Shown piece after piece: positions 19,928 to 49,875 of a DNA stretch of 64,000 nucleotides; position 1 is the first letter of the stretch; every line of letters begins with the position of its first letter. The DNA is from Schmidtea nova (taxonomy: Eukaryota): positions 239,382,001 to 239,446,000 of the forward strand of contig CM097882.1 of the NCBI GenBank assembly GCA_044892505.1. The letters are read 5' to 3'. The notes under the pieces were generated by a model. That model did not search any database and had not been told where the DNA came from. It was given only the letters and a program-made list of their open reading frames with translations. The translations under genes were made by a program, and so were the position numbers.

Positions 19928-20733
19928 GTCTTCAGTAGGAGGCTATGAGCGGTCCAGATCCACTACCCCCCATGTGTGTATATTACGTAATCGCTCGGAC
20001 TTTACATAGCACACATGATTACGCAATTCTCGGGTTTTAAATAGCACACACGTTATTACGTAATATTTCTCGGCCTTTTACATAGCACACAAATTATGAC
20101 GTCATGATTACGTAATCGAGGTCAAAGGTCAAGGTCATTTCGAGGTCGAGGTCAAGGTCATTTTTTTGTTTTAATTTTAATTTTTTGGCGCAATTTTTGA
20201 ATTTTATTGCCGTTTGTTTAAATAAAGTAAATAATTATTTTTTTGGCGCAATTTTTGAATTTTACCGCATTTTTTTTTTGAATTTTAGTGTAAATTTTTT
20301 GTCGCAATTTTTTGAATTTAAGCGTCATTTTGTTTAATCTGTTGGGCCCACCAATTGGTCTAAAAAGGCAAAAATATTGTACTAATTTAAACAATAAATA
20401 CAAATAATAACCACAAAAAAAAAAAAAAAAAAAAAACATTCGAAAAACCTAAATTAAAAATTAAAATAAAATAATAAATAATAATTACTAAATTTCCAGC
20501 AAAGGAAGAAAATCAAATTGACACGAGAACGAGCAGTATGGGGGTCTGAAATAAGAAAATTACAAATAAAATCAAATAAAAGTACAATTAATTGGTTAAT
20601 TACTTGAAAAATCGAGACCACCCAGCGAGAAATCTGAACCGGAAATTTAAAATGGTTTATATTAAAATAAAATAACAAAATTACTTTGATGGACGGCCTG
20701 ATCCTGATTGGTCAATCTGACCAACTGGATCAG

Positions 20734-20741
20734 TATAAATA
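20734..20741 (+). promoter_or_regulatory. Putative LTR TATA box with upstream CCAAT/ATTGG boxes
   Basis: TATAAATA preceded by GATTGGTCAATCTGACCAAC (~20706-20725); same in all three LTR copies. Confidence 0.45.
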
Positions 20742-21637
20742 CCGATCCAAAAATCATACAGATAACACCTAACAAATTAGTTACCGAACTGATCTATCAT
20801 AGTCAACTTTGATACGATAAATACTGTATAAATTTTTGGAGAACACTGCATCGTGGATTTAAACAGTAAATTTTTTTTTTGTATTGTATTTTGTATTAAT
20901 TTTTATGATATGTTTCATGATTCCCATTTGTTTTATTTTCATTTAATATAATTTATTACTATTGCTCTATTTCTCTTATGCCATTATTTTTATGATATAA
21001 TAAATATACTTCCTCAGTAGCTTACGCTGCGAGGGAGCAAGCCGTAAATGTGGGATTTCACCGTTCCACAAGATGGTGAGCAGAGTTTTTATTAGTATTC
21101 TTTATTTAATTTCATTTTATCGGAAGTTTCACGGTACGGTAAAGTTGTGCAGGGACAAGGACACGAGTAAAATTTGTAGACAGTGGTTAACATTTACATT
21201 CGATCAGACAGGCGAAAACAAAACTATAATATCAATTATCAGGTCGACTAGATCGATTTTTCTCATATACACGCGAATTTTTGTGAATCAACATAGCGGA
21301 TCGAAATAACGTCCGGACACACCGAGACGATTTCGACGTTCCAACTACAGTTTAATTTAGACATAAATAACGACATATTCGGATCGACACTACTGATTAA
21401 ATAAATAAAATCGTAACCTGATCGCTGTACATAGCGCAGGTAATAATAGGTAAATTTTTCATATTCCGATCGCTGTACATAGCGACGGTGTTAATTGAAT
21501 AGTCTGGAAAATATTTTTTTTATTCCTCCTTTTCACATTTTTTTTGTGTTATTGATCAGCGAGCAGAGCACTTTTTTCTCAGGTCTCACCAAAATTTACG
21601 GATTCGTCGCAATAAAATTTATTATTAATTTTCTCAG

Positions 21638-22138
21638 ATGAAAGCAACGATGCTGGATGAATTTCTAACCACTCAACGTCATGTGGCACGGGTCGAAAAT
21701 CCTCTAATCCGGACGCAACGGAAGAAATTGAAGTCGCTCCCACAGGAACTCCTCAGAACGCTAAATGCGTTGATGTATAAATGGAGAAGGGAACTAGGAA
21801 AGAAATGTCCATTTTCGATTTGGACCGGTGGATTGGATACCATCGTATATCGAGGAGGCCCCGGATGGGAAATTCAGGACGAAAGAGACCGGGAGACGAC
21901 AGCTCTGTTCATCATAGTGGTGTCAGACAGCGAAGGAAATCCCACGACAGCGATCCATTGGGGATATGTCTCACCGCTCAAGTTGCTTAAATTCGGGTTG
22001 ATTCCGAATCACCTACCGAAAACGTGCCACGGACGCCCCAAACTAAACTGTTCGATGGCTCACATCCGAAGAAATCCAGTCAATCACGGGTTGCATATTA
22101 CTCCCGTTCACGGCCTCAAGCGAAGTGTTTTCCACTAA
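21638..22138 (+). CDS. LTR-internal ORF1, 166 aa, unknown function (copies at 1503-2003 and 47903-48403)
   Basis: GC-richer open frame in an AT-rich LTR; preceded by ttttctcag|ATG and followed by AATAAA (22175-22180) and a GT-rich tract; intact in all 3 LTRs. Confidence 0.6.
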   Translation: MKATMLDEFLTTQRHVARVENPLIRTQRKKLKSLPQELLRTLNALMYKWRRELGKKCPFSIWTGGLDTIVYRGGPGWEIQDERDRETTALFIIVVSDSEGNPTTAIHWGYVSPLKLLKFGLIPNHLPKTCHGRPKLNCSMAHIRRNPVNHGLHITPVHGLKRSVFH

Positions 22139-22277
22139 ACATTATATTCACATTTTTATAAACTAAACGATTTCAATAAATTAAATGGTGTTGATCCGTG
22201 TTTTTGTTTGTCCTTAGTTAAATTTATTTCTATTTATTTAATCATATGATTTTTACACTCGACGGATAATATTAATC

Positions 22278-22913
22278 TTGGTAACATGTTTGATGCATTA
22301 TAAATTGGGTTTGTTATTTAGTATGACGGAAACTAGCCAACAGCGAGAATTGGACAAGGCGTGGAGAATCCGCCGAGCATTGGAGAAGGAGCTAAACCAA
22401 GAAAAAGCCTTACGAGCCAAAGCAGAAGCTCAGATTCAGCATTTACGGACCAGCTGGTTCGCACCAGCTCGCATGAAGGAGCAGATGAGTCGGACAGAAA
22501 GGGCTCAAAGGACAGCTGACGATTATCGCACCGAATGGGAAGCAACAAAAATTGAGTTGCGCCGATGTCTCCATTCGGTGACGACTTCATTTATCGAGTC
22601 CGAATTGAAAGCACAAATCCGACCCATTACCTACCAGAAATGGGTAGGAGAACAGAAAGTGGCCTGCTCAGTCAGTACGGACACCGATGGACTCGAGGCA
22701 ACCACAGTGCAGAGTCGAGTGGAAACCACCACTGCACCAACTCCCGCCGGAAAACCGAATAAGCGAAAACGAATCGGCTCCAAGCGTCGTCGCCAAAGGA
22801 AGCTGTTTTCTCAGCAATTGCAGACACAAGTAACCACGATGGCAGGAATGTCGGAAGCCGAGTGGTTGGCAGAGATGTTTCCACCTGAAGGAATATTCAA
22901 AGAATTCCTATAA
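22278..22913 (+). CDS. LTR-internal ORF2, coiled-coil protein with basic NLS-like motif (first ATG 22323; copies at 2143-2778 and 48543-49178)
   Basis: Heptad-like N-terminus (RELDKAWRIRRALEKELNQEK) and KPNKRKRIGSKRRRQRK; intact in all 3 LTRs. Confidence 0.6.
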   Translation: MVTCLMHYKLGLLFSMTETSQQRELDKAWRIRRALEKELNQEKALRAKAEAQIQHLRTSWFAPARMKEQMSRTERAQRTADDYRTEWEATKIELRRCLHSVTTSFIESELKAQIRPITYQKWVGEQKVACSVSTDTDGLEATTVQSRVETTTAPTPAGKPNKRKRIGSKRRRQRKLFSQQLQTQVTTMAGMSEAEWLAEMFPPEGIFKEFL

Positions 22914-23411
22914 CAGCTAGAATACGATGTCAGATTGTGGACTTAATTAAAATTTTGCTCGTTTTTGTTTTTTTTTTGTTGTTGTTAATTCCTAAGTATT
23001 TTTCCTTCGATTACATAATTCGTACCATTACCTGTAAATTACCCGTCACACAACGAAAAGAGTAGCGATAAAGAACTTAAATATTATCAAATTCGTAGTT
23101 TCGTTTTGCTTGTTTGTTTTTTGTTTTTACGATAATTACATAACCGCACACACACACACAATAGAACTATAATTGCGTAAGTCCTTCTACGGCCGCGTGA
23201 ACCCGTAAACATAAAGGGGGAGTAGTCCTAGCAATAGTGCTCACCTGCCCCTCATTGTTTAATCACCCTGCGCATCACCAACTTGGTTATCAAGGGAAAT
23301 AATCAAGGGCGCTCGAGTGTAACTTACGACTATTTATGCATGATCATGGATGGAAGATCCCTAGCCGTCATTTGAATTTTTATCAACCCGTCCATGAACC
23401 CAGCATAAATT

Positions 23412-23429
23412 TGGGGGCTCAGCCGGGAT
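23412..23429 (+). other. Primer-binding site, tRNA-Pro-like
   Basis: TGGGGGCTCAGCCGGGAT, 16/18 match to the retroviral tRNA-Pro PBS TGGGGGCTCGTCCGGGAT, 6 nt after the LTR end. Confidence 0.85.
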
Positions 23430-23672
23430 CAACTTCGTTTTATCGGAAAAAGGTGAATGAAAAATCTGCAGAGAAGTTAAAGTGCTCGTGTCGTATGAAT
23501 AAATTTAATAAAAACAGAAAATTGGTAATTAAATCTAAATGATGTACAAAAATAAACAACAAACACAACAGCAAATAAAAGTAAAGTTATAAAAATCGAA
23601 TGCATGCATAAACAATTTGTCGGGACGACAATTTTCGGAAACACGGGGAGAGTAAATAAATGCTAAAAGATG

Positions 23673-23783
23673 CAAAACGAAACATATTACTACTTTAAAT
23701 AAATATTAAATTCACAAAACGAAACATATTACTACTTTAAATAAATATTAAATTCACAAAACGAGACATATTACTACTTTAAA
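23673..23783 (+). repeat. 42-bp tandem repeat x2.6 directly upstream of the RING ORF
   Basis: Unit CAAAACGAAACATATTACTACTTTAAATAAATATTAAATTCA starts at 23673, 23715 and 23757. Confidence 0.9.
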
Positions 23784-23784
23784 A

Positions 23785-24288
23785 ATGATAAAAACAACAA
23801 AGTTAAAACGATTATTTATTCAGCAAATGGAGGAAAAACTGAAAGAAATCGAAGAATTTCTCAACACAGAAAGCGAAACATTAGCAACAATTGGCAAGAA
23901 AATAAACCGATTTAGAGAAATTGAATTTCAAGAACCCACAACACAGACCGAAGAAACAGATGAATTAATAAAGATAACAGAAAGAACAAGTAAAATCGAC
24001 ATAAAAACCCGCTACAAATGGTACCAAGCACGACTAGAGAATGCGGAGCTAAACATTAGATGCAGACAAATAGAACAACAATTAACCCCAACATACAAGC
24101 GATGGAGGGCGCAAGGGGTAGAAGCAGCGAAAAAATACCGACAGTGCTATATATGTGAAAACAACGAGATACAAATTATGTTTTTACCTTGCGGACATTT
24201 CCGTTTTTGTAAGATCTGTGCCAGCAAGTGTGACCGGTGTCCGATGTGCAACTTTACCGTGAATGAAAAAATTATAGTTTATTTGTAA
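23785..24288 (+). CDS. Coiled-coil + C-terminal C3HC4 RING protein (IAP/MDM2-type RING, no BIR), 167 aa (copy at 3650-4153)
   Basis: CYICENNEIQIMFLPCGHFRFCKICASKCDRCPMC at 24145-24249, close to the C-terminus. Confidence 0.85.
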   Translation: MIKTTKLKRLFIQQMEEKLKEIEEFLNTESETLATIGKKINRFREIEFQEPTTQTEETDELIKITERTSKIDIKTRYKWYQARLENAELNIRCRQIEQQLTPTYKRWRAQGVEAAKKYRQCYICENNEIQIMFLPCGHFRFCKICASKCDRCPMCNFTVNEKIIVYL

Positions 24289-24770
24289 TAAATGTTTAGA
24301 GTTGATTAGTAAAAGATCGAATGGTGAATCATGGGAACAATCATTGTATTTAAATAATTTTTGAGCTACTGCAAAGTAGTCCGATAAGAATCCATTGGGG
24401 GGTACCGATTGATCAACCTAGTCAGGGTATATAGAAAGGGGCCCATCGCAAATGTTGGAAAGTTTTTGTGATGTGATTGATCACCACATCCTGCATTAAT
24501 AGACCAACGCGATCTTTGTGTATATTTTGGTTGGGGAGAGAGATAGGGAAATCTCGATGGAGTAAAGCGCGCATAGAGAAAAATAAATAAAAAGTTGAAG
24601 CAGACTGATCAGGAATTAGTTATGATAGAACAAAGAGATAAATGACAATTTTGAGAGAATAAAAGGTGCATAGTCAGCTCGCATAGAAGTAGTTATAACT
24701 CAGCTGAGAAGTTTTAATCGCTAGCGAAGTAGGGAATTGTGATTAACCGGTTAAGTAAAGTTATACGAGA

Positions 24771-24853
24771 TTTGTCCCTTGAAACAAAGGGTTATTAGAG
24801 TTGTCCCTTGAAACAAAGGGTTATTAGCGGTTTGTCCCTTGAAAAAAAGGGTT
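24771..24853 (+). repeat. 3 x ~30-bp tandem repeat containing a CCCTT-N6-AAGGG inverted repeat
   Basis: TTGTCCCTTGAAACAAAGGGTT(ATTAG) three times. Confidence 0.9.
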
Positions 24854-24904
24854 GAGGCCAACGAGCCTTATTGAATGACCTAGCTAGGCGTTATGGAGAG
24901 ATTA

Positions 24905-25084
24905 ATTGAGGCCAATAGAGCCAGTGAGATATTAAATTAAGGCCAATAGAGCCATGTGAGATATTAAATTAAGGCCAATAGAGCCATGTGAGATATTAAA
25001 ATTGAGGCCAATAGAGCCATTTGAGATAGTAAAATGAGGCCAATAGAGCCATGTGAGATATAAAATTGAGGCCAAAAGAGCCAT
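24905..25084 (+). repeat. 6 x ~31-bp tandem repeat carrying CCAAT boxes; possible internal promoter
   Basis: Unit ~ATTGAGGCCAATAGAGCCATGTGAGATATTAA; five units have GGCCAATAG, the sixth GGCCAAAAG. Confidence 0.85.
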
Positions 25085-25694
25085 AGTGGATTATAGAGAT
25101 ATCCGGATAAATAGTAACAGAGGGAATATAGACCCATAGTGTAATCGTCGACGAGATTTAGAATAGTGCGCACTAGTAGTTAAGAAATGCGAGTAAAGCT
25201 GATTATGCAACCTTAAGTAAAGCATGCAAGGAGAATAATAAAAATTCGAGCTGACCGGAGCAACCGGCAGAATGAGTAAAACGATTGCTAGCAGGGAATA
25301 ATGAATAAAGATGATAAAATAATGATAAACGAGTCAGAAAGACTCAGGGAATTAGAGCGCTCGAGCGACCAATAAATTGGGAAACTGTGGGAAAAGTAAT
25401 GGATTTGATAAAACATAGATAATTATTACGACATAAATAGATAATTGTGACCAGTCTATAGATAATTTAAATAGACTAAAAATAAAGGGGAATCTGGGAA
25501 TTGGGAAATAATGAAAACCCAGTAATAAGTAATCCCGAAAGAAAGGGAATAAAAGCGCGACGATAACAATAAGGTATCGTTGAGGACCTTTGTATTTTAG
25601 ATATACAAATCAATCAAATCAATCAAGCAACAAGAAGAATCAGAAAAACGATAATAGATAGGACAAGAAAATTGATAATATAAAAGTAATCCAG

Positions 25695-28600
25695 TTGAGA
25701 AAAGGAGCAAAGAGTGTCGCAATAAAGCCAACAAAAAAGCAGAAAGCCGGCAAAGATAACCACAAAAACCCACAAGGGAGTAAAGCGAGGAAAATAATAA
25801 GAGATAAATCAATTATCGAAAACGATAAATTGTCAGTAGTAAGCAACAGCTCAAGTAACAAAGAGAACCAAGCGGAACCCAAGGAGAACCAAACAAGCGA
25901 AATAGAAAGCGACGAAACTATCAACGATAATATCGAAGAAGTAGAAAACGAGGTAGAACCAGAGGTAGAAACCAACGAAAGTGATAACGAAAGTATAATA
26001 TCAGATAACGAAGGAATAAGAGAAACAGAAAGCGATTCAAGCTCGAGTGGAACAGAAGACGAACATAACAACGAACTAGAAACAAGAGGAAACGAAAGTA
26101 AAATAACTCAAGACAGCGGAATTGAAATGGGTGAACCAAGAGAAGAAATAAAGGATAAATTTTCAGGAGAACCGTTTAACGGAGATGCGAGTAAATTGGA
26201 AATTTTTCTAAAGGAATTTGGCATATTCGTGGAAGTATGCAAATGGAAAGCTGAGACAACAGCAAGTAGAATACAGTTATATTTGAAAGATAGTGCATTG
26301 GACCTATATTTGGAAGCGAAAAATGGTACCAATCCACCTACAAGCTGGTCAGCGATAAAGGATTTTTTCCAGCAAACATTTGGAATAAATAAAGTGCTAA
26401 GCGAAGCATTCATAGAATTTTCGATGAGAAAACAAAAGATGAATGAGTCTAACGCGGTATACGCGAGCGAACTGAAAAAATTAGCAAAATCGGTATTCAA
26501 GGATGGGGGTCCAATAAACGAGGAATTAATGGCAGCCATCTTCATAGGAGGATTAAGAAGACCCGACATAAGAGCGCAAGTTGGATGCCAAGGATGCAAA
26601 ACCATAGACCAAGCGTTAGAGACAGCTAACCGATTTGAATTACATATGATAGGAAGCGAGGGTAGAATTTATTTAGCCATGGACACAGCACAAACCGAAC
26701 CAGAGGTAAATCTCAACAATCACATTCCAAATTCGCAACAATTAAACCGACCACCCCCTCAACGAAGGAATGAAGGAAATAAAGTGCAGAACTTTGGAAA
26801 CCAAAACAATTACCACCCTCAAGGACAAACAAAACAATGTAAAACATGCGGGAAGTTGGGACACTGGCAGCAAGAATGCTACCAAAATTTGAATTGCGGA
26901 AAATGTGGAGTTAAAGGACACTCGGAAAGTAGATGTTCTACAATAATCTGTTTTAATTGCGGACGACCTGGTCACTACTCAAGGAATTGCGGACAAAAAG
27001 GTAATCAACGGGGAAATTGGCAGAACAACGGAAACCGACCAAATTACGGAAATCAAACAAATACTGCAAATCGACAAGATTATGGCAACCAACAGGTCAA
27101 TAATAACAATAATCAGAACAAAACTACCACCAAAGAAATACATTTGATGCAAGAAGTTCAAAGATTGACGGAACTTATAAACAATACGACGAGAGGGAAC
27201 CCGCAAACCAATCAACAACAAATTAGCATGATGAGAAAAATAGAAAGCGAAAACGAACGATTGAATCGAGAAAGTCAAGCACGACACGCTCAGGAATGGG
27301 CAAGAATACAAAGAGAGGATGAACAAAAACAGCAAGAAAGAGAACGACAACCTCTAAGAATTAACATGCTAAGAGCAACAAACCAAACAGACACTCGCGA
27401 GAAAGAAACCACACTGGAAATGAATTCGATAGACCCGAATCCAGCCGACAACGAAAGTCGAAAAGAAATAGTACAAAAAGATGAGGAAGTAGAAAAAGAA
27501 GTAGAAAAGGAAGCGGAAACTGAGATAAACCAAGAAGAGAGAAGAAAAATTTGGAAAAAAGGAATGATGGTAATCATGCCCAACGACCATGTGTTTCGAT
27601 TCCAATATAACGCAAAAGAAAAGGTGGAAATACTATTCAATAAAGTAAACCAGATGATTCCAGGAGTAACGAAACTGCCCAGAGAAGCGTTCTTACAAAT
27701 AGGAGATGCACCATCAGTAAAATTGAAATTAACGGATATATGGGAAAACATGGGAGTAACAGAGACAAAAAGAAATGTGATGAGAATCAAAGAAATAGAA
27801 TCAGAAGAAATTCCACCACCAGTGCGTCACGAAACCCGAATCAGCCGAATATTTAAAGGAAAAATGATACGAAGACGTTTGAAAGAAATAGACGAGTTAG
27901 AGAAGAAAATGAGAAAAGTCGAAGTAATAGAGGATAAGAGTGAACCAACACTAGAGATTGCCAAAAACGAACCAGAACCAACGGAGAATATACAAGGGGA
28001 AACGAACCAAATAGCTCATATTAGTATGTTAAGAAATACCACCAGAGAGTTTTCCGATGAAGAAGAAGATAGCGACATCAGTAGCCTAGCAGGAGACATA
28101 TTAAACGAATCCGAAGACGAAAATAAAGAGAGAGAAGTAATAAAGACCTCAGAACCTACACAGATAAAAGTAGATGAAATCCAGAAATTACTAGATAACT
28201 CGTTAGAAGTAATATATAACGAAGAGTTCATGGACAAGAAACAATATCGGAAATTCATGAAAGCATTATTACAAATGAACTACAAAGATTGGTTACAAGA
28301 CCGGGAAGTGGACATGTTAAATCGATACGTAGGGAAATTAATAGAGGAACCACTCCTCAATTACACTATCTCAATAATAATAAATACATCTACACCAAGA
28401 ATCTGGATCAAAACTCCATTTACAGACGATATCTACAGATGGGTAGAGGATAGACTAGGGAGCTCATATAAAAACAAATTCATCTATTCGCAGAATAGAC
28501 TCGTAAAGAAAAGAACGCACTTAGTAGAAACAGGTATATGGCCAGGAGAAATAACTCTGTTATCAATATGTGATGAGAAGGAAGAAGAGAACCTACAAGA

Positions 28601-42738: not shown

Positions 42739-43095
42739 ATGACCGAACAGGACGAAACAACCGAAATAACTATGGCTATGAGATGGAAAGCACAATGCGA
42801 TTTATTAGTACGAACAGTCAACTCATTACAGAACCAATTAGCGGAAAAACAAATGTTACTATCAGAAAGTTATAACAATTGTTTCGAACAATTACACAGA
42901 ATAGAGGAACAACAAAGAGCGATAACTGAACTCACCAGGGAAAATCAAACGATAAGCAACACCAATCAAAGACAAGCAATAGAAATAAACCATTTAACAC
43001 GAGGAGAAAGAGAAGGATCCGAAGAAGGATGGATGAGTTGGGTAATAAATAGATTAAACAACGAAGCGGAACCAGATTCAACGAATGAGCCATAG
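42739..43095 (+). CDS. 118-aa coiled-coil protein, unknown function
   Basis: ATG-initiated ORF on the element's coding strand; Q/E/L-rich heptads. Confidence 0.65.
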   Translation: MTEQDETTEITMAMRWKAQCDLLVRTVNSLQNQLAEKQMLLSESYNNCFEQLHRIEEQQRAITELTRENQTISNTNQRQAIEINHLTRGEREGSEEGWMSWVINRLNNEAEPDSTNEP

Positions 43096-43192
43096 ATAAA
43101 TAAAGCGAAAAAAAAAAACTGTAAATATGTAAAAATAAAAACAAGAAAACCAAAAATAAATGACAGGTCGAATGTATATATTATTGTAGAAA

Positions 43193-44569
43193 ATGGACCG
43201 AGATGAACGGGTAATCGAAATCTTGAGATTAGAAAACAGAAAATGGAGCAAGAGGCTCACATGCGGAAAATGTAATAATTTATTGCGAGAACCCAGACAA
43301 ACGATATGTGGATGTAGAATATGTACAAAATGTATACAAGAATTAGATGCAACAGGAATAACAACATGCCCAGAATGTAAGGAAGGAAGAATAGTGTTGG
43401 ATGAAACCAGAATGGACAAAGCAACCCAAAGAGAAATTATGAGCACCACAACGGAGTGCGTAAATACACCTTGTACATGGCAAGGACAAATAAGTAATCT
43501 GGAAAACCATATGGAAAAATGCGAGGAAAAGAGAGCCGAATGCGAGAAATGCCAACAGACAATAACTCTAAAGAAGAGAGAACAACACAAGGAAGAATGT
43601 AAAGAAGAAGAAATCGCATGCGAGTATTGTGAAACTCGAGAAACAAGGAGAAAAATCGAAGAAGAACACTTAAATATAACAGAGGAGAAAGTATGCAGAC
43701 AATATGTAAGCAAATGTCCAAACAATTGCGAAATAACAGAAGAAATAAAGTTACATGAACATTGGAAAATATGTACCGAAAGGCCAAGAGAATGTCCATA
43801 TAACAAGCATGGATGCAAGGAAAAGCGGACGCGAAAAACAATGAAACAACACTTGGAAGAAGCAGCACTAACGCATGTGGAAATGACAAACGAAACGACA
43901 AAAGAAACAGAACAGACAGTCCAGAAATTAGAAAAAGAAGTAGAATCACATAAGATAATGATGAGTTTACTACTAGAAACAAGAGAGCAGTTTGAACTAA
44001 CTCGCGAAAGAATGGAAAAGAAAATAATAGCCATAGAAGAATTAGGAAAAGGAATGAAAATACAATATAATCAACTAATACGAGAAATTGACGAAAGAAG
44101 GGACTTACCAATCGCACCTTACCTATGGAAAGTAACAGATTTCAGAGACAAACTAGCAGAAGCCAGAAATATGACGAAAACAGCAGTAATAAGCCCACCA
44201 TTTTATTTATGGAAAAATGGGGTTAAAATAAGATTGAAGGTCTACCCAAATGGAGACGGAAGAGGACAAGGAACACACGTATCAATATTCTTCTCGTTAT
44301 GTAAAGGAGAATACGATGACCTAATAGAATGGCCCTTGAAAGTAGGAGTCATTATAAGAATCAAAAGTATAGGAAAACCAGTAGAAAAGTTCTTTGAAAC
44401 AGACAAACATACGAGTACAAGCGAAAAACCAACAACAGAATGCGGACTAGCAGCAGGAGAACCAATGTTTATAAGGAAAGAAAACCTATGGGAGCGACTA
44501 TATGCAGACACGCTATACATAGAGATGGAGAGGCATGAGAAAACGGATAGAAAAGGATGGTTGGCGTAA
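43193..44569 (+). CDS. TRAF: TNF receptor-associated factor homolog (RING - Zn fingers - coiled coil - MATH), intronless
   Basis: RING CGKC..LLREPRQTICGCRICTKC...CPEC (43262-43378); TRAF Zn fingers; MATH YLWKVTDF...SPPFY...IRLKVYPNGDGRGQGTHVSIFFSLCKGEYDDLIEWP. Confidence 0.93.
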   Translation: MDRDERVIEILRLENRKWSKRLTCGKCNNLLREPRQTICGCRICTKCIQELDATGITTCPECKEGRIVLDETRMDKATQREIMSTTTECVNTPCTWQGQISNLENHMEKCEEKRAECEKCQQTITLKKREQHKEECKEEEIACEYCETRETRRKIEEEHLNITEEKVCRQYVSKCPNNCEITEEIKLHEHWKICTERPRECPYNKHGCKEKRTRKTMKQHLEEAALTHVEMTNETTKETEQTVQKLEKEVESHKIMMSLLLETREQFELTRERMEKKIIAIEELGKGMKIQYNQLIREIDERRDLPIAPYLWKVTDFRDKLAEARNMTKTAVISPPFYLWKNGVKIRLKVYPNGDGRGQGTHVSIFFSLCKGEYDDLIEWPLKVGVIIRIKSIGKPVEKFFETDKHTSTSEKPTTECGLAAGEPMFIRKENLWERLYADTLYIEMERHEKTDRKGWLA

Positions 44570-44683
44570 TGAAGGAAGTAACCATGTAAATAAACTGTAT
44601 AAAACAATATGAAATAACAAATAATCAAAAACAATAAAAATAAAAAAACTGATTAAATATTCTTTTTATCTGTAATTATAGAA

Positions 44684-45745
44684 ATGGGAAATATAGAAGT
44701 AACCTTACAAGAAGTAACCGTACATCAAGACGAAATGATCAGAAATCACATGGAGCGGATTGGGATATGGATTCACGCCTATTATCGTAAACAGGAAGAA
44801 TTAGAAAGACAAACCGAAGTACTAAGAGAAGCTGAAGAAAGGAATCAAAGAAGTAGAGAAAAAATAGAGGAAGTCTATAAATTACTGAGGCAACAAAACG
44901 AATACTACAAAGGAATGATGAAAGAGCGACGAGAGGATAGAGATAGACAACAGATAAAAACAGACCACAAGATCCAGTCCATCACCGAACAAGCAAGATA
45001 TTGGAAGAAAGAGGCAAAAGACTCTTACAAGGAAGCAAGGGAGATAATTGAACGAACAGCGTATAGCGATGATTGGAAACTGTTTAAAGAGATCGATGAA
45101 TTAAAAGAGGAATTAGGGCAAAAGATCAGTCAAGAAGCGTCAAATAAGGTATGGAGTAAGAAAAGACAACAATTCATCAGAGAACAAGCCAAGAAAATTA
45201 AAGAATTAACTTATCAAGTACAAAGAATGGGAGAAGATTTAGCCAATCAAGAACAATTAAAAGGTATGCTGACCGGAATGTGGAATCACAAGGAAGAAAA
45301 CATGAAAAGAGACATAAATGGATACCAAGGAGTGATTACCCAGAAGAAAATAGAATTAAAAAGAACTAAAGAAAGACTAGAAGAAACGAGGCAGAGTTAT
45401 GAAGAGAACATAACCAATTTGACAAAAGAAAACGAAGAACTGAGAAAGAAGCTAACAGAAAAACCAGTACCCACAAAGGAAACAAGTATCACAGCAGCAG
45501 TGACCGAAATGATAAAGAAAGAAGAGAGAGAGAAAAAATTAGCAGAATTGGAAAAACAAATAGAAACCCTAACAGAGCAGGCGAACTATCTGGAATACTT
45601 ATTAGATGAAGAGATTCAGATATCCCACACATACCGAGAGGAAGTGGAAATGTGGAGGAGTACGGTAATATGGATGCCACTCCCCATAAATCAGGTGGAA
45701 CCTCAAGACGAAGGTTTTCACGAACCTAACGAAACCCTCGTGTAA
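44684..45745 (+). CDS. 353-aa long coiled-coil protein, unknown function
   Basis: Intact ORF, E/K/Q/R-rich heptads throughout. Confidence 0.75.
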   Translation: MGNIEVTLQEVTVHQDEMIRNHMERIGIWIHAYYRKQEELERQTEVLREAEERNQRSREKIEEVYKLLRQQNEYYKGMMKERREDRDRQQIKTDHKIQSITEQARYWKKEAKDSYKEAREIIERTAYSDDWKLFKEIDELKEELGQKISQEASNKVWSKKRQQFIREQAKKIKELTYQVQRMGEDLANQEQLKGMLTGMWNHKEENMKRDINGYQGVITQKKIELKRTKERLEETRQSYEENITNLTKENEELRKKLTEKPVPTKETSITAAVTEMIKKEEREKKLAELEKQIETLTEQANYLEYLLDEEIQISHTYREEVEMWRSTVIWMPLPINQVEPQDEGFHEPNETLV

Positions 45746-45823
45746 ATGAGCGGAAACCAATTGTAAATAGATGATGTAAAATAAAAAGCGTCAAGCTGTA
45801 TTGACTCCTATGTAAAGATAGAA

Positions 45824-46384
45824 ATGAGAAAGCTCGCAATACCAATACTCCTATGGTTAATAACCATCACCCTACAGAGAGAAGATCTACAACTTACCGA
45901 AACCCAATTACGAGTTCTACCCGACAAAACCTACCAAAAAGTAGACAGCCTAATCGAAGAAGTAATTAAAGAAATCAACGAATTCCGACAGAAATATCCC
46001 CACAATCAAGATCATCAAATCCAACAAATCTTAGATAACCAACAACTGAAACTAAAAGAAACCCAAAAAACCCTGAAAGAAGGTAGAGAGCCCATAAAAA
46101 GCCTAGCCCAAGCTGAAATAGAATATCAAGAGAAATGGATCATAGCAATCATCATAATCCTCTCAATCAGCGTAACTATCGTCGCAATCACAATCCTGAT
46201 TGCCTCCTACCGGATAAAAATCCTCAAACAGAAACAAACCATCGTCAATCAAACATCAAGGCGAGACAAACGAACCCAAAGACGTATGAGAAAACATCTA
46301 GATCAAATTCAGACCCACTACGAATTAGCTACAATCAATGAGAGAACTCAAACCCAACCCAATGCGAGCCGGAGGATCGAATAG
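45824..46384 (+). CDS. 186-aa predicted type I membrane protein
   Basis: Hydrophobic N-terminus MRKLAIPILLWLITITL, coiled-coil ectodomain, TM WIIAIIIILSISVTIVAITILIASY, basic tail. Confidence 0.7.
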   Translation: MRKLAIPILLWLITITLQREDLQLTETQLRVLPDKTYQKVDSLIEEVIKEINEFRQKYPHNQDHQIQQILDNQQLKLKETQKTLKEGREPIKSLAQAEIEYQEKWIIAIIIILSISVTIVAITILIASYRIKILKQKQTIVNQTSRRDKRTQRRMRKHLDQIQTHYELATINERTQTQPNASRRIE

Positions 46385-46565
46385 ACTTTGTGAACATCTC
46401 TGATGAACCTTTAACTATCCTGTGACAATAATCTGATAATATTCAACTATCCTATAACAAATCTCATGATGTGTATAAATTCTATCACCCTAAGTGATTT
46501 TCTTGTGTTTATGTATATATCTGTAAAACTTTTTATGTATGATGTTATAAGTAGTTATGTATAAT

Positions 46566-46601
46566 TAATTGCGGGACGCAATTTTAGGGGTCCCCGAGTG
46601 A
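46566..46601 (+). other. Atypical polypurine-tract region upstream of the 3' LTR
   Basis: AATTGCG-GGA-CGCAATT hairpin, then TTAGGGGTCCCCGAGTGA before TG; only a short AGGGG purine run. Confidence 0.5.
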
Positions 46602-49600
46602 TGTTGGGCCCACCAATTGGTCTAAAAAGGCAAAAATATTGTACTAATTTAAACAATAAATACAAATAATAACCACAAAAAAAAAAAAAAAAAAAAAAAA
46701 CATTCGAAAAACCTAAATTAAAAATTAAAATAAAATAATAAATAATAATTACTAAATTTCCAGCAAAGGAAGAAAATCAAATTGACACGAGAACGAGCAG
46801 TATGGGGGTCTGAAATAAGAAAATTACAAATAAAATCAAATAAAAGTACAATTAATTGGTTAATTACTTGAAAAATCGAGACCACCCAGCGAGAAATCTG
46901 AACCGGAAATTTAAAATGGTTTATATTAAAATAAAATAACAAAATTACTTTGATGGACGGCCTGATCCTGATTGGTCAATCTGACCAACTGGATCAGTAT
47001 AAATACCGATCCAAAAATCATACAGATAACACCTAACAAATTAGTTACCGAACTGATCTATCATAGTCAACTTTGATACGATAAATACTGTATAAATTTT
47101 TGGAGAACACTGCATCGTGGATTTAAACAGTAAATTTTTTTTTTGTATTGTATTTTGTATTAATTTTTATGATATGTTTCATGATTCCCATTTGTTTTAT
47201 TTTCATTTAATATAATTTATTACTATTGCTCTATTTTTCTTATGCCATTATTTTTATGATATAATAAATATACTTCCTCAGTAGCTTACGCTGCGAGGGA
47301 GCAAGCCGTAAATGTGGGATTTCACCGTTCCACAAGATGGTGAGCAGAGTTTTTATTAGTATTCTTTATTTAATTTCATTTTATCGGAAGTTTCACGGTA
47401 CGGTAAAGTTGTGCAGGGACAAGGACACGAGTAAAATTTGTAGACAGTGGTTAACATTTACATTCGATCAGACAGGCGAAAACAAAACTATAATATCAAT
47501 TATCAGGTCGACTAGATCGATTTTTCTCATATACACGCGAATTTTTGTGAATCAACATAGCGGATCGAAATAACGTCCGGACACACCGAGACGATTTCGA
47601 CGTTCCAACTACAGTTTAATTTAGACATAAATAACGACATATTCGGATCGACACTACTGATTAAATAAATAAAATCGTAACCTGATCGCTGTACATAGCG
47701 CAGGTAATAATAGGTAAATTTTTCATATTCCGATCGCTGTACATAGCGACGGTGTTAATTGAATAGTCTGGAAAATATTTTTTTTATTCCTCCTTTTCAC
47801 ATTTTTTTTTGTGTTATTGATCAGCGAGCAGAGCACTTTTTTCTCAGGTCTCACCAAAATTTACGGATTCGTCGCAATAAAATTTATTATTAATTTTCTC
47901 AGATGAAAGCAACGATGCTGGATGAATTTCTAACCACTCAACGTCATGTGGCACGGGTCGAAAATCCTCTAATCCGGACGCAACGGAAGAAATTGAAGTC
48001 GCTCCCACAGGAACTCCTCAGAACGCTAAATGCGTTGATGTATAAATGGAGAAGGGAACTAGGAAAGAAATGTCCATTTTCGATTTGGACCGGTGGATTG
48101 GATACCATCGTATATCGAAGAGGCCCCGGATGGGAAATTCAGGACGAAAGAGACCGGGAGACGACAGCTCTGTTCATCATAGTGGTGTCAGACAGCGAAG
48201 GAAATCCCACGACAGCGATCCATTGGGGATATGTCTCACCGCTCAAGTTGCTTAAATTCGGGTTGATTCCGAATCACCTACCGAAAACGTGCCACGGACG
48301 CCCCAAACTAAACTGTTCGATGGCTCACATCCGAAGAAATCCAGTCAATCACGGGTTGCATATTACTCCCGTTCACGGCCTCAAGCGAAGTGTTTTCCAC
48401 TAAACATTATATTCACATTTTTATAAACTAAACGATTTCAATAAATTAAATGGTGTTGATCCGTGTTTTTGTTTGTCCTTAGTTAAATTTATTTCTATTT
48501 ATTTAATCATATGATTTTTACACTCGACGGATAATATTAATCTTGGTAACATGTTTGATGCATTATAAATTGGGTTTGTTATTTAGTATGACGGAAACTA
48601 GCCAACAGCGAGAATTGGACAAGGCGTGGAGAATCCGCCGAGCATTGGAGAAGGAGCTAAACCAAGAAAAAGCCTTACGAGCCAAAGCAGAAGCTCAGAT
48701 TCAGCATTTACGGACCAGCTGGTTCGCACCAGCTCGCATGAAGGAGCAGATGAGTCGGACAGAAAGGGCTCAAAGGACAGCTGACGATTATCGCACCGAA
48801 TGGGAAGCAACAAAAATTGAGTTGCGCCGATGTCTCCATTCGGTGACGACTTCATTTATCGAGTCCGAATTGAAAGCACAAATCCGACCCATTACCTACC
48901 AGAAATGGGTAGGAGAACAGAAAGTGGCCTGCTCAGTCAGTACGGACACCGATGGACTCGAGGCAACCACAGTGCAGAGTCGAGTGGAAACCACCACTGC
49001 ACCAACTCCCGCCGGAAAACCGAATAAGCGAAAACGAATCGGCTCCAAGCGTCGTCGCCAAAGGAAGCTGTTTTCTCAGCAATTGCAGACACAAGTAACC
49101 ACGATGGCAGGAATGTCGGAAGCCGAGTGGTTGGCAGAGATGTTTCCACCTGAAGGAATATTCAAAGAATTCCTATAACAGCTAGAATACGATGTCAGAT
49201 TGTGGACTTAATTAAAATTTTGCTCGTTTTTGTTTTTTTTTTGTTGTTGTTAATTCCTAAGTATTTTTCCTTCGATTACATAATTCGTACCATTACCTGT
49301 AAATTACCCGTCACACAACGAAAAGAGTAGCGATAAAGAACTTAAATATTATCAAATTCGTAGTTTCGTTTTGCTTGTTTGTTTTTTGTTTTTACGATAA
49401 TTACATAACCGCACACACACACACAATAGAACTATAATTGCGTAAGTCCTTCTACGGCCGCGTGAACCCGTAAACATAAAGGGGGAGTAGTCCTAGCAAT
49501 AGTGCTCACCTGCCCCTCATTGTTTAATCACCCTGCGCATCACCAACTTGGTTATCAAGGGAAATAATCAAGGGCGCTCGAGTGTAACTTACGACTATTT

Positions 49601-49670
49601 ATGCATGATCATGGATGGGAGATCCCTAGCCGTCATTTGAATTTTTATCAACCCGTCCATAAACCCAGCA
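46602..49670 (+). repeat. 3' LTR (3069 bp)
   Basis: By eye differs from the 5' LTR at about 4 substitutions and 2 homopolymer lengths; followed by TSD AATC. Confidence 0.96.

Positions 49671-49831: not shown

Positions 49832-49875
<44 letters not shown>

What the first reader, a model, noticed from the sequence alone, without database searches (positions are those of the whole stretch)
20340..49670. Intact 29.3-kb LTR retrotransposon with the gene load of a complex virus
Seen: matched 3-kb LTRs, PBS, TSD, one 5638-codon ORF, five further intact internal ORFs and two LTR-internal ORFs. Known: typical Ty3/gypsy elements are about 5-10 kb; giants of this size class include plant Ogre and, from memory, the planarian 'Burro' elements, so this may be a Burro relative. 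Inference: an enveloped, possibly infectious endogenous metavirus that has collected host-modulating genes in the way large DNA viruses do.
Basis: partly seen in the sequence, partly recalled or inferred. Interest (0 to 1): 0.95.

Follow-up and report, generated by a model that had tools for sequence, protein, structure and literature searches.

The report
Intact giant Burro-type enveloped retrotransposon
This is a real, intact and very recently inserted 29.3-kb Ty3/gypsy retrotransposon that encodes gag, a herpesvirus-gB-like envelope protein and pol in one giant reading frame plus TRAF-, RING- and ankyrin-type host-like modules, but this kind of element (the flatworm 'Burro' / GAG-ENV-POL group) has already been described.

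Summary
The element spans 20340-49670. It has 3,066/3,069-bp LTRs that differ by 4 substitutions and 2 indels, TG..CA ends, a 4-bp TSD (AATC), a PBS-like site, one 5,638-codon open frame (5,494 codons from the first ATG), five further internal ORFs and two LTR ORFs. A paralogous empty site elsewhere in the window proves it is an insertion.

The giant frame reads gag (3 CCHC) - 1,330 aa unannotated - complete envelope cassette - PR - RT - RNase H - IN - ankyrin repeats - about 7 tandem beta-sandwich repeats. The envelope cassette has a signal peptide, an ectodomain and a TM anchor. It matches Pfam Monjiviricetes_fusion (E 6e-71), and its AF2 model matches herpesvirus gB and chuvirus glycoproteins. 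The pol core is closest to Ty3.

Among the accessory ORFs are a RING protein, a full-length TRAF homologue and a small membrane protein.

The giant gag-env-pol polyprotein with TRAF, RING and ankyrin modules is the published Burro/GYPSM1 architecture (PMC6431247). The gB-type GAG-ENV-POL order in flatworms is also published (PMC13524379). Identity to a named Burro family could not be tested, and infectivity is unproven. The details that may be new are the C-terminal repeat array, the module layout and the LTR ORFs.

The parts
20336..20339 (.). Left target-site duplication (AATC)
   Evidence: the same 4 bases occur once at the paralogous empty site.
20340..23405 (+). 5' LTR (3,066 bp, TG...CA)
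   Evidence: It differs from the 3' LTR by 4 transitions and 2 indel events.
21638..22138 (+). LTR ORF 1 (166 aa, basic, no family hit); copy in the 3' LTR at 47903-48403
   Evidence: Only 0.8% of 500 dinucleotide shuffles reach 166 aa. The codon score is weakly positive (0.046) and GC is 49%. Coding status is unresolved.
22278..22913 (+). LTR ORF 2 (211 codons from TTG, 206 from the ATG at 22293); copy in the 3' LTR at 48543-49178
   Evidence: It is longer than every one of 500 shuffles (maximum 185). An AATAAA lies 33 nt after its stop (22946). Coding status is unresolved.
23412..23430 (+). Primer-binding-site-like sequence (starts TGG, 6 nt after the LTR)
   Evidence: The matching tRNA was not identified.
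23785..24288 (+). 5' accessory ORF: 167-aa protein with a C-terminal RING finger, in the leader upstream of gag
   Evidence: Pfam zf-C3HC4_3 E 3.7e-11; in-frame codon score 0.144.
24768..25084 (.). Leader tandem repeats (29-nt and 32-nt units); another array lies at 23673-23783
25695..42611 (+). Giant gag-env-pol-plus ORF: 5,638 codons open, first ATG at 26127 (5,494 aa), uninterrupted
   Evidence: The coding signature is positive in all segments, including the unannotated ones.
26127..26990 (+). Gag: Retrotrans_gag-like region plus three CCHC zinc knuckles (aa 382, 401, 419)
   Evidence: It is homologous to the N-termini of relatives.
27090..31076 (+). About 1,330-aa Glu/Lys/Arg/Ile-rich stretch between gag and env; no family assigned
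   Evidence: No Pfam or PDB hit. No match in relatives, except that the last ~80 aa match P0089. Coding signature is positive.
31077..32900 (+). Envelope cassette: Met1795, signal-peptide-like segment (aa 1797-1817), ectodomain with 14 Cys, TM anchor (aa 2380-2402)
   Evidence: Pfam PF24664 E 5.9e-71. Hydrophobic segments. AF2 pLDDT 86. Foldseek matches herpesvirus gB at E 2e-14 and chu-like virus glycoproteins at E 2e-38. 945 homologues in the HMMER search.
33483..33755 (+). Aspartic protease (DTG present)
   Evidence: Pfam RVP E 2.4e-7; motif.
34419..34895 (+). Reverse transcriptase (YIDD present)
   Evidence: Pfam RVT_1 E 5.8e-37; Ty3 Gag-Pol 7q5b E 1.9e-106.
35082..35471 (+). RNase H
   Evidence: Pfam RT_RNaseH E 7.5e-37 and RT_RNaseH_2 E 1.2e-36.
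35796..36311 (+). Integrase (HHCC zinc domain plus DD35E core)
   Evidence: Pfam Integrase_H2C2 E 4e-20 and rve E 2.3e-10; motifs.
37185..38429 (+). Two ankyrin-repeat blocks (aa 3831-3920 and 4150-4245)
   Evidence: Pfam Ank_2 E 7.3e-14 and E 4e-5; PDB ankyrin/DARPin hits.
39222..42155 (+). About 7 tandem ~90-aa Cys-pair repeats (aa 4510-5487), tentatively FN3-like beta-sandwiches. A TM-like segment lies within the array at 40854-40910 and another after it at 42366-42422.
   Evidence: A local profile built from 3 units finds 4 more (i-E 4e-9 to 0.045). Alignment A3 has invariant C, W, C. AF2 pLDDT 74.5, seven strands. Fold hits to FN3 are weak (best E 2e-3). Sub-threshold Pfam Fn3 hint. TM-like segments.
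42739..43095 (+). Accessory ORF, 118 aa, acidic, no family
   Evidence: codon score 0.224.
43193..44569 (+). Accessory ORF, 458 aa: TRAF homologue (RING, TRAF zinc finger, MATH)
   Evidence: Pfam MATH_2 E 9.5e-21, zf-TRAF E 2.5e-6, RING weak. 24-26% identity over 90-94% of its length to animal TRAF2/3/4-like proteins. Codon score 0.318.
44684..45745 (+). Accessory ORF, 353 aa, Glu/Lys/Gln-rich, no Cys, no family
   Evidence: codon score 0.213.
45824..46384 (+). Accessory ORF, 186 aa, small protein with one strong TM segment (about aa 106-124)
   Evidence: KD 3.04; codon score 0.120.
46602..49670 (+). 3' LTR (3,069 bp). The sequence just upstream (46570-46601) has only a short purine run, so the PPT is weak or atypical.
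49671..49674 (.). Right target-site duplication (AATC)
61640..61690 (-). Paralogous empty site on the other arm of a ~6.3-kb palindrome: flank - AATC - flank without the element

Best explanation
Window 20340-49670 is one intact, very young insertion of a Burro-type giant Ty3/gypsy (Metaviridae) LTR retroelement of the GAG-ENV-POL, gB-type-envelope kind known from flatworms.

Shown:
- It is a bona fide insertion (TSD plus empty site) with near-identical LTRs.
- Its pol core is Ty3-like, and all signature motifs are present.
- A complete class III (herpesvirus-gB / chuvirus-G-like) fusion glycoprotein cassette, with its own signal peptide and TM anchor, sits in frame between gag and protease.
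- It carries TRAF-, RING- and ankyrin-type modules and further ORFs that have the element's codon signature.

Inferred mechanism:
- The genomic RNA is translated into a single polyprotein that threads the ER membrane.
- Gag and the acidic linker stay cytosolic. The internal signal peptide sends the env ectodomain into the lumen, where host signal peptidase would cut after it.
- The TM anchor brings the chain back, so PR-RT-RNase H-IN are cytosolic on the env tail. The element's protease then cuts out the parts. This topology resembles that of flavivirus-type polyproteins.
- The envelope would let particles pass between cells, for example from tissues where silencing is weak into stem or germ cells, as proposed for Drosophila gypsy.
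- The TRAF, RING and ankyrin proteins would interfere with host ubiquitin, NF-kB or cell-death signalling.

The small 3' ORFs, and possibly the LTR ORFs, would be accessory genes expressed from subgenomic or spliced RNAs. This last point is untested.
For: Insertion and youth.

Ty3/gypsy core: Pfam domains in PR-RT-RH-IN order. The best solved relative is Ty3 Gag-Pol at E 1.9e-106, collinear over RT-RH-IN. Motifs present.

Envelope: PF24664 E 5.9e-71. 945 homologues, with a top tier inside polyproteins and a second tier of ~650-aa free glycoproteins that includes a named chuvirus glycoprotein. AF2 pLDDT 86. Foldseek matches gB at E 2e-14, probability 1.0, about 625-790 aligned columns among the matches listed, and chu-like virus glycoproteins at E 2e-38.

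Topology: a signal-like segment exactly at the start of env and a TM anchor at its end. The same bracket is found in 17 of 18 polyprotein relatives.

Relatives: they share the in-frame gag-env-PR-RT-IN order at 42-46% pol identity.

Accessory genes. Codon-usage signal is positive for all five internal ORFs and all unannotated polyprotein segments, and negative for the antisense control ORFs.

Literature: Burro/GYPSM1 architecture with in-frame env, three CCHC knuckles in Schmidtea, and TRAF, RING and ankyrin modules (PMC6431247). Flatworm GAG-ENV-POL elements with gB-type ENV flanked by SP/TM (PMC13524379). BURRO1 is transcribed and controlled by PIWI in planarians (PMC8532177).
Against: - The host is not identified. 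Only the AT-rich flanks (20-30% GC) fit a planarian genome.
- No sequence of a named Burro family could be obtained, so family identity rests on architecture.
- Pfam did not detect BIR, BCL2-like, SUMO-like or dUTPase-like motifs, which are reported for Burro, in this copy.
- No close relative (>51% identity) was found, so conservation of the accessory ORFs, LTR ORFs and C-terminal repeats could not be tested.
- The single-polyprotein topology is inference. Env could instead be made from a spliced RNA or by internal initiation at Met1795.
- The first 144 codons of the open frame lack an ATG.
- The PPT is weak.
- Neighbouring gaps and a same-locus duplicate show assembly trouble nearby.
Confidence: 0.85

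Rival explanations
1. The 29.3-kb structure is an assembly chimera. Reads from several Burro-like copies were collapsed or joined, so no such intact element exists in the genome.
For: Two N gaps lie just upstream, and a 16.8-kb near-identical duplicate of flank plus the 5' half of the element ends in a gap. Burro elements are a known assembly problem (PMC11410931).
Against: There are no Ns inside the element. The TSD is exact and a matching empty site lies on the paralogous arm. The LTRs differ at only 7 alignment columns: 4 substitutions plus 3 gap columns from 2 indel events. A 16.9-kb ORF and all accessory ORFs are uninterrupted, which a mosaic of diverged copies would rarely give. The duplicate agrees with the main copy except for 2 mismatches and 2 gap columns.
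Confidence: 0.05
2. Same element, different expression logic. Env is made as a separate protein from a subgenomic spliced RNA or by internal initiation at Met1795, as in ordinary retroviruses. The in-frame position is incidental.
For: The env cassette keeps its own Met directly before the signal peptide. The 2.7-kb leader and tightly packed 3' ORFs suggest complex RNA processing. Free-standing ~650-860-aa versions of the glycoprotein exist.
Against: There is no stop codon between env and protease in this copy or in any of the polyprotein relatives examined. A message starting at Met1795 would therefore still yield Env fused to Pol. The in-frame arrangement is kept at 42-46% pol identity, which argues that it is used.
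Confidence: 0.3
3. The element is transcriptionally and evolutionarily dead cargo. It is a recent copy made in trans whose extra ORFs (LTR ORFs, ORF118, ORF353, ORF186, C-terminal repeats) are non-functional filler, not accessory genes.
For: These parts have no family hit and no homologue in relatives. The LTR ORFs have only a weak codon signal and an atypical composition.
Against: All internal ORFs and the C-terminal extension show the same in-frame codon bias as env-pol, while the open antisense frames do not. ORF lengths exceed shuffles. The seven diverged repeat units (16-28% identity) keep invariant C, W and C positions, which points to constraint on a fold.
Confidence: 0.15

Closest known systems
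[quoted passage not shown] 2018; annotated in Arkhipova & Yushenova 2019, PMC6431247)
   Same: Giant (>25-30 kb) Ty3/gypsy element. One enormous ORF with gag (three CCHC knuckles), env in frame between gag and pol with mononegavirus-type hits, and PR-RT-RH-IN. Carries TRAF/MATH, RING and ankyrin modules, leader tandem repeats and accessory ORFs.
   Different: The published ORF1 is 4,873 aa with MATH_TRAF inside the polyprotein. Here the frame is 5,494-5,638 codons and TRAF is a separate 3' ORF. BIR, BCL2-like, SUMO-like and dUTPase-like motifs were not detected by Pfam here. About 7 tandem Cys-pair beta-sandwich repeats and two LTR ORFs are not mentioned for Burro. Nucleotide identity could not be measured.
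Burro-like element of Dugesia (Girardia) tigrina (PMC6431247)
   Same: Giant polyprotein (5,140 aa) lacking MATH_TRAF, which is instead encoded by a separate accessory ORF. Env is in frame.
   Different: There the TRAF ORF is upstream, two CCHC knuckles are reported and midasin-like homology is noted. Here the TRAF ORF is downstream of the polyprotein, a RING ORF is upstream, there are three CCHC knuckles and no midasin hit.
GAG-ENV-POL 'errantiviruses' with HSV/gB-type ENV of Platyhelminthes, Nematoda and Bryozoa (PMC13524379)
   Same: Ty3/gypsy pol. Class III gB-like ENV placed between gag and pol. Ectodomain flanked by a signal peptide (or TM) and a TM. Multiple near-identical genomic copies reported.
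   Different: That survey treats gag, env and pol as ORFs of ordinary-sized elements. It does not describe 29-kb elements, a single fused frame, or TRAF, RING, ankyrin or repeat cargo.
Mosquito BEL/Pao elements with captured Chuviridae glycoprotein (Dezordi et al. 2020, PMC7642597)
   Same: An LTR retroelement associated with a Jingchuvirales-family glycoprotein.
   Different: Different retroelement superfamily (BEL/Pao). Env is a separate gene. Ordinary size and no host-like cargo.
Ogre elements of legumes
   Same: Very large Ty3/gypsy elements with long LTRs and extra ORFs.
   Different: Ogre's size comes mostly from LTRs and non-coding DNA. It has no env of viral type and no giant polyprotein, and its hosts are plants (PMC6431247).
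Drosophila gypsy / ZAM errantiviruses
   Same: Env-carrying Ty3/gypsy elements, thought to move between somatic and germline cells.
   Different: Class I baculovirus-F-type Env encoded by a separate spliced ORF3 after pol. About 7.5 kb.

Membership tests
LTR retrotransposon (structural definition) | Two direct long terminal repeats with TG...CA ends | tested here: met
   3,066/3,069 bp, 99.77% identity, TG...CA.
LTR retrotransposon (structural definition) | Target-site duplication and evidence of insertion | tested here: met
   4-bp AATC on both sides. The paralogous empty site reads flank-AATC-flank.
LTR retrotransposon (structural definition) | tRNA primer-binding site next to the 5' LTR and polypurine tract next to the 3' LTR | tested here: inconclusive
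   A TGG-initiated 19-mer lies 6 nt after the LTR, but no host tRNA is available for comparison. Only a short purine run precedes the 3' LTR.
Ty3/gypsy (Metaviridae) | Domain order PR-RT-RNase H-IN with the integrase after RT | tested here: met
   Pfam coordinates aa 2597-3539, in that order.
Ty3/gypsy (Metaviridae) | RT/RH/IN sequence closest to Ty3/gypsy references | tested here: met
   The best solved-structure match is Ty3 Gag-Pol 7q5b at E 1.9e-106. Retroviral RTs score E 1e-33 or weaker. No full phylogeny with GyDB or Repbase was possible.
Burro family (giant planarian gypsy elements) | Total length of about 30 kb or more, with an internal region up to ~25 kb | tested here: met
   29,331 bp in total and 23.2 kb internal, against the description in PMC6431247.
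Burro family (giant planarian gypsy elements) | Single giant polyprotein with env in frame between gag and pol | tested here: met
Burro family (giant planarian gypsy elements) | Cargo motifs: MATH/TRAF, RING, ankyrin | tested here: met
   TRAF and RING are separate ORFs here.
Burro family (giant planarian gypsy elements) | Cargo motifs: BIR, BCL2-like, SUMO-like, dUTPase-like, Smc/midasin | tested here: not met
   No Pfam hit at E<=1 in the relevant segments. The published hits came from HHpred, which is more sensitive, so absence is not proven. These motifs vary between Burro members according to PMC6431247.
Burro family (giant planarian gypsy elements) | Sequence identity to a Burro-1..4 / GYPSM1 reference | not testable with these tools
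   Repbase and Dfam are not on hand. Grohme 2018 is not held and no primer or probe sequences are available.
Burro family (giant planarian gypsy elements) | Host is a dugesiid planarian | not testable with these tools
   Flanks of 20-30% GC fit the >70% A/T genome (PMC11410931), but no host marker gene is in the window. The exact-protein look-up found nothing.
gB-type GAG-ENV-POL errantivirus-like elements (PMC13524379) | ENV with a class III (herpesvirus gB-like) fold | tested here: met
   AF2 pLDDT 86. Foldseek versus PDB gives gB chains at E 2e-14, probability 1.0.
gB-type GAG-ENV-POL errantivirus-like elements (PMC13524379) | Ectodomain flanked by a signal peptide (or TM) and a TM; order gag-env-pol | tested here: met
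Monjiviricetes/Jingchuvirales fusion glycoprotein (Pfam PF24664) | Score above Pfam's gathering threshold over most of the model | tested here: met
   239.7 bits against a cut-off of 27. Model positions 5-209 and 243-579 of 653 are matched. The nearest predicted viral structures are chu-like virus glycoproteins.
TRAF proteins | N-terminal RING, TRAF-type zinc fingers, C-terminal MATH/TRAF-C domain | tested here: met
   MATH_2 at 74.9 bits (cut-off 32), zf-TRAF at 28.6 bits (cut-off 27), and RING below the cut-off. Full-length alignment to animal TRAF2/3/4-like proteins at 24-26% identity.
Fibronectin type III-like repeats (C-terminal array) | Seven-strand beta-sandwich with significant fold or profile match | tested here: inconclusive
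   Seven-strand model at pLDDT 74.5. The best FN3/monobody matches have E 2e-3 to 5e-2 and TM about 0.5. Pfam Fn3_Dep-1_1st at E 0.062 is below the cut-off.

The most novel reading that the evidence does not exclude
This copy may represent an undescribed Burro lineage in which the post-integrase extension encodes a second, membrane-anchored surface protein. That protein would be built from about 7 FN3-like Cys-pair repeats with a TM segment and a charged tail, and would act as an attachment partner for the gB-type fusogen. On this reading the ORFs embedded in the LTR are genuine 3'-terminal accessory genes. The result would be a retroelement with a two-component entry apparatus and a virus-like set of signalling decoys (TRAF, RING, ankyrin), all threaded through the membrane as one polyprotein.
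Probability: 0.1. Interest if true: 0.7.

Novelty: new member of a known kind. Interest (0 to 1): 0.35.

Why it matters
Burro-type elements are the largest LTR retroelements known, and they blur the line between transposon and complex enveloped virus. An intact, evidently recent copy with a mapped empty site is a clean reference for annotating such elements in flatworm genomes, where they hamper assembly and sit near synteny breakpoints.

The conserved signal-peptide/TM bracket around an in-frame class III fusogen offers a concrete, checkable model of how a retroelement can make gag, env and pol from one polyprotein. The TRAF, RING and ankyrin cargo and the newly noticed repeat array are candidates for host-interaction functions.

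None of this overturns current knowledge. It extends published descriptions.

Tried and rejected
- **Bacterial-type promoter/terminator scan of the LTR:** no enrichment, and not relevant to a eukaryotic element.
- **tRNA scan to match the PBS:** no tRNA gene in the window.
- **Exact-sequence look-up of the TRAF ORF to identify the host:** not on record.
- **PDB sequence searches with the gag-env linker, env and the C-terminal extension:** nothing beyond ankyrin and integrase.
- **Word-indexed search with env alone:** only two hits. The full HMMER scan was needed.
- **Cluster names for the closest env-bearing polyproteins:** all are unnamed metagenome proteins, and one is mis-binned as Flavobacteriaceae.
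- **JGI metagenome and IMG/VR scans for close relatives:** best 51% identity over a fragment, and none, respectively.
- **Homology between the post-integrase tails of relatives and this element's C-terminus:** none. The shared 'two TM segments near the C-terminus' pattern is therefore only an analogy.
- **Obtaining Burro reference data:** Grohme 2018 is not held, there is no supplement with BURRO1 primers, and 'GYPSM1' occurs only in the review.
- **The published suggestion that Burro env is gypsy-Env / class I-like:** not supported for this copy, whose fold is class III.
- **Antisense ORFs (e.g. 43078-44034, 40697-41491):** rejected as by-products of the A-rich coding strand, because their codon scores are negative.

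Full report

Yes, at exactly the stated coordinates.

- **LTRs.** A self-comparison of the window shows 20340-23405 and 46602-49670 aligning over 3,069 bp at 99.77% identity. A global alignment gives 4 substitutions, all transitions, and 2 small indel events. The LTRs begin TG and end CA.
- **TSD and PBS.** The four bases AATC flank both ends, at 20336-20339 and 49671-49674. A TGG-initiated 19-mer lies 6 nt after the 5' LTR, at 23412-23430.
- **ORFs.** The ORF list gives one 5,638-codon frame (25695-42611), five more + strand internal ORFs and two ORFs inside each LTR. One correction: the 5,638 codons are counted from a TTG. The first ATG is codon 145 (nt 26127), which gives 5,494 codons.

**2. 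Independent proof of insertion.**

The downstream flank (49671-55599) is one arm of a large inverted repeat. The other arm is 55737-61666, at 98.98% identity. Beyond that arm, 61663-62062 is the reverse complement of the upstream flank 19933-20339, at 97% identity. Read on the minus strand, 61640-61690 therefore gives upstream flank - AATC - downstream flank with nothing in between. This is a paralogous empty site with a single copy of the 4-bp target. It rules out a chance arrangement and makes a chimeric assembly unlikely.

**3. Assembly caveat.**

Window 1-16827 duplicates 20136-36964, which covers the same 204-bp flank, the 5' LTR, the leader and the first part of the giant ORF. The two differ by only 2 mismatches and 2 gap columns, and the duplicate stops at an N run (16828-17327). 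A second N run is at 17889-18044. Because the flank is shared, this is the same locus assembled twice (an unmerged overlap or haplotig) or a very recent segmental duplication. It is not a second insertion. The full element itself contains no N.

**4. What the giant ORF encodes** (amino-acid positions counted from nt 25695)

| Segment | Position (aa) | Evidence |
|---|---|---|
| Retrotrans_gag-like region | ~195-288 | |
| Three CCHC knuckles | 382, 401, 419 | |
| Glu/Lys/Arg/Ile-rich stretch, no family or PDB match | ~466-1794 | |
| Envelope cassette | 1795-2402 | see section 5 |
| Protease, DTG present | 2597-2687 | |
| Reverse transcriptase, YIDD present | 2909-3067 | |
| RNase H | 3130-3259 | |
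| Integrase, HHCC and DD35E present | 3368-3539 | |
| Two ankyrin blocks | 3831-3920, 4150-4245 | |
| Extension to the stop | up to 5638 | see section 9 |

The PR-to-IN core is closest among solved structures to the Ty3 Gag-Pol polyprotein (7q5b, E 1.9e-106), collinear over RT-RH-IN. Retroviral enzymes score far lower. The element is therefore a Ty3/gypsy (Metaviridae) member with nothing visibly broken. I found no stops or frameshifts in any gene.

**5. The envelope.**

- **Sequence family.** Pfam PF24664 (Monjiviricetes_fusion) matches at E 5.9e-71, in two stretches that cover model positions 5-209 and 243-579 of 653.
- **Cassette features.** The module starts with its own Met (1795), followed by a hydrophobic signal-like segment (1797-1817, ending ...ATA|F). 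It has 14 Cys and ends in the strongest TM segment of the whole protein (aa ~2380-2402).
- **Homologues.** A full HMMER scan of 1.84 billion representative proteins gave 945 homologues. The top tier (28-47% identity) lies inside long polyprotein-type proteins. A second tier (22-27% identity) consists of free ~650-700-aa proteins. Among the second tier are a named chuvirus glycoprotein and 'Glycoprotein' entries in insect genomes.
- **Fold.** With a 71-sequence alignment (A2), AlphaFold2 gave a confident model (mean pLDDT 86). Foldseek matches herpesvirus gB ectodomains over essentially the full length (E ~2e-14, probability 1.0). In the viral predicted-structure library it matches chu-like, qin-like and xinmo-like virus glycoproteins (E down to 2e-38).

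The env is therefore a class III fusogen of the Jingchuvirales/Monjiviricetes family. It is not the class I baculovirus-F/gypsy type that the 2019 review tentatively linked it to.

**6. Accessory ORFs.**

- **Upstream of gag.** A 167-aa protein in the 2.7-kb leader carries a C-terminal RING finger (zf-C3HC4_3, E 3.7e-11).
- **Downstream of the polyprotein.** Four ORFs follow, separated by only 78-127 nt:
  - a 118-aa acidic protein;
  - a 458-aa TRAF homologue with MATH (E 9.5e-21), a TRAF zinc finger and a weak RING, which aligns over 90-94% of its length at 24-26% identity to animal TRAF2/3/4-like proteins;
  - a 353-aa Glu/Lys/Gln-rich protein without Cys;
  - a 186-aa protein with one very hydrophobic segment.
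- **Coding test.** I trained a codon-usage log-likelihood only on env-PR-RT-IN. It is positive in frame 0 and strongly negative in frames 1 and 2 for all five ORFs and for every unannotated part of the polyprotein (0.12-0.32 per codon). Long antisense ORFs score -0.29 to -0.46. These ORFs therefore look like genes of the element and not like chance frames.

**7. LTR ORFs.**

Both are intact in both LTRs, with one amino-acid difference in total. Their lengths, 166 and 206 aa from ATG, are rarely or never reached in 500 dinucleotide shuffles of the LTR (0.8% reach 166 aa, and the maximum is 185). Their codon score is only weakly positive (0.045), and at 49% GC they are compositionally unlike the rest of the element, which is 36-38% GC. 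They have no family hits. An AATAAA lies 33 nt after the stop of the second ORF. That would fit their being the last genes of the transcript, but the transcription start and poly(A) site are unknown. I leave their status open.

**8. Relatives.**

The word-indexed search with the pol region returned seven giant metagenome proteins of 3,108-4,057 aa. They carry PF24664 in the same protein as PR-RT-RH-IN and share 42-46% identity with the query over pol. Local BLAST shows that they, and the 4,844-aa P0241, share the order gag ... env ... PR-RT-RH-IN with this element. One has ankyrin repeats between env and PR and a ubiquitin-like domain. Several have two to four protease-like domains.

In 17 of 18 such proteins the env module is bracketed by a signal-like hydrophobic segment at its first residues and a TM anchor at its end. 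None matches aa 466-1680 or 3760-5638 of this element. No closer relative was found in JGI metagenome contigs or IMG/VR. One of the four metagenome loci, L003, comes from a human-skin metagenome. I do not take it for human DNA, but I left it unused.

**9. The C-terminal extension.**

Cys residues between aa 4500 and 5490 come in pairs 12-18 residues apart (15-16 in most pairs) with recurring contexts. A profile built locally from three clear units found four further units that were not used to build it (independent E-values 4e-9, 2e-7, 6e-4 and 0.045). It found nothing in any relative or accessory ORF.

The seven units are about 90 aa each: aa 4510-4600, 4678-4763, 4774-4860, 4906-4979, 5173-5263, 5327-5396 and 5421-5487. 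They share only 16-28% identity but keep an invariant C-W and a second C. Using the units as each other's alignment, AlphaFold2 gives a seven-strand all-beta model at moderate confidence (pLDDT 74.5, pTM 0.64). Fold matches are weak but consistently fibronectin type III domains and monobodies (best E 2e-3, TM ~0.5). Pfam gave a sub-threshold Fn3 hint in the same region. I call the array 'tentatively FN3-like'.

Two TM-like segments lie between units 4 and 5 (aa 5054-5072) and after unit 7 (aa 5558-5576). What this module does is unexplained.

**10. How it most likely works.**

*Shown.* This is a Ty3/gypsy replication core with all signature motifs. It has a complete class III fusogen in frame between gag and protease, with no stop before pol, and that arrangement is conserved across relatives at 42-46% pol identity.

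*Inferred.* Translation yields one polyprotein that crosses the ER membrane twice. Gag and the acidic linker remain cytosolic, and the internal signal peptide sends the env ectodomain into the lumen. The TM anchor then returns the chain, so PR-RT-RH-IN hang on the cytosolic env tail. Host signal peptidase and the element's protease would separate the parts. Both gag and pol need to be cytosolic, which the even number of membrane passages provides, and the bracket is conserved.

The main rival, a spliced or internally initiated env message, would still produce Env fused to Pol, because no stop intervenes.

By analogy with Drosophila gypsy, the envelope would let particles move between cells. 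This fits BURRO1 being expressed in differentiated planarian tissues under PIWI control (PMC8532177). The TRAF, RING and ankyrin proteins plausibly interfere with ubiquitin-dependent immune or cell-death signalling, as Arkhipova and Yushenova proposed for Burro. None of these functional statements is tested here.

**11. Comparison with what is known.**

The 2019 review (PMC6431247) describes Burro-1/GYPSM1 of Schmidtea mediterranea as follows:

- total length over 30 kb, and a 4,873-aa ORF1;
- gag with three CCHC knuckles;
- MATH_TRAF, SUMO-like and BCL2-like motifs;
- env in frame between gag and pol, with mononegavirus hits;
- PR, a dUTPase-like motif, RT, RH and IN;
- BIR, ankyrin and Smc motifs.

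A Dugesia tigrina relative has a 5,140-aa ORF1, with TRAF moved to a separate ORF.

The 2026 eLife paper (PMC13524379) reports that flatworm, nematode and bryozoan env-carrying Ty3/gypsy elements have gB-type ENV in GAG-ENV-POL order, flanked by SP/TM.

This element matches all the defining architectural features. It differs in the following details:

- frame length;
- TRAF as a 3' ORF and RING as a 5' ORF;
- no Pfam-detectable BIR, BCL2, SUMO or dUTPase;
- the seven-unit repeat array;
- the LTR ORFs.

Sequence identity to a named Burro family could not be tested, because no reference sequence is available through these tools. The host could not be identified. Only the 20-30% GC flanks fit the >70% A/T planarian genomes.

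**12. Verdict.**

Infectivity and host modulation remain inference.

Novelty is low, because the kind is published. I file it as a new member of a known kind, with a substantial chance that it is simply one of the Burro families already in Repbase. Interest: 0.35.

Noticed in passing
window 1-16827 (vs 20136-36964); N runs 16828-17327 and 17889-18044: A second, truncated copy of the same flank plus the 5' half of the element. It differs by 2 mismatches and 2 gap columns and ends at a gap. It is probably an unmerged overlap or haplotig, or else a very recent segmental duplication. It is not an independent insertion.
   Followed up: partly
window 19933-20339 + 49671-55599 vs 55737-62062: A ~6.3-kb-arm palindrome (arms 97-99% identical, 137-bp spacer) of 20-30% GC DNA. 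It is full of tandem repeats, including (TTA)n arrays at 49722-49987 and 61325-61614. The element sits in one arm, 407 bp from its outer end, and the other arm is empty. The nature of the palindrome (foldback-type repeat?) is unknown.
   Followed up: partly
window 62300-63280 (- strand): A 326-aa ATG ORF just outside the palindrome. It has no Pfam hit but a positive in-frame codon score (0.138) under the element's codon model. It may be an unknown host gene or a remnant of another mobile element.
   Followed up: partly
L001 (ENA contig_69536, 29,990 bp) and protein P0090: A relative's gag-env-pol polyprotein lies on a metagenome contig next to bacterial-type genes (MacB, ABC transporter, TetR). 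Another relative is deposited as a Flavobacteriaceae MAG protein. These are probably chimeric assembly or mis-binning of eukaryotic retroelement DNA.
   Followed up: no
proteins P0051, P0241, P0042, P0044: Relatives carry two to four protease-like domains in one polyprotein, some of them after the integrase. P0045 has ankyrin repeats between env and PR and a ubiquitin-like domain between gag and env. Cargo modules evidently move around within this group.
   Followed up: partly
window 23673-23783 and 24768-25084: Tandem repeats (42-nt, 29-nt and 32-nt units) lie in the 2.7-kb leader between the RING ORF and gag. The 144 codons of the giant frame before its first ATG have a weaker coding score (0.075).
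   Followed up: no
window 40854-40910 and 42366-42422 (giant ORF aa 5054-5072, 5558-5576): Two TM-like segments lie within and after the repeat array. Most full-length relatives also have two or three TM-like segments near their C-termini, although their tails are not detectably homologous to this one.
   Followed up: partly
one search hit list (Cordylochernes scorpioides proteins P0001-P0041): The highest-scoring 'giant' hits are 3,100-5,800-aa pseudoscorpion gene models that look like concatenated ordinary gypsy/copia polyproteins without the env domain. They are not relatives in architecture.
   Followed up: no
L003 (ENA human-skin metagenome contig, 8,734 bp): A gypsy-type pol at 42% identity turned up on a contig from a human-skin metagenome. 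I do not take it for human sequence, but it was not compared, saved or searched further.
   Followed up: no
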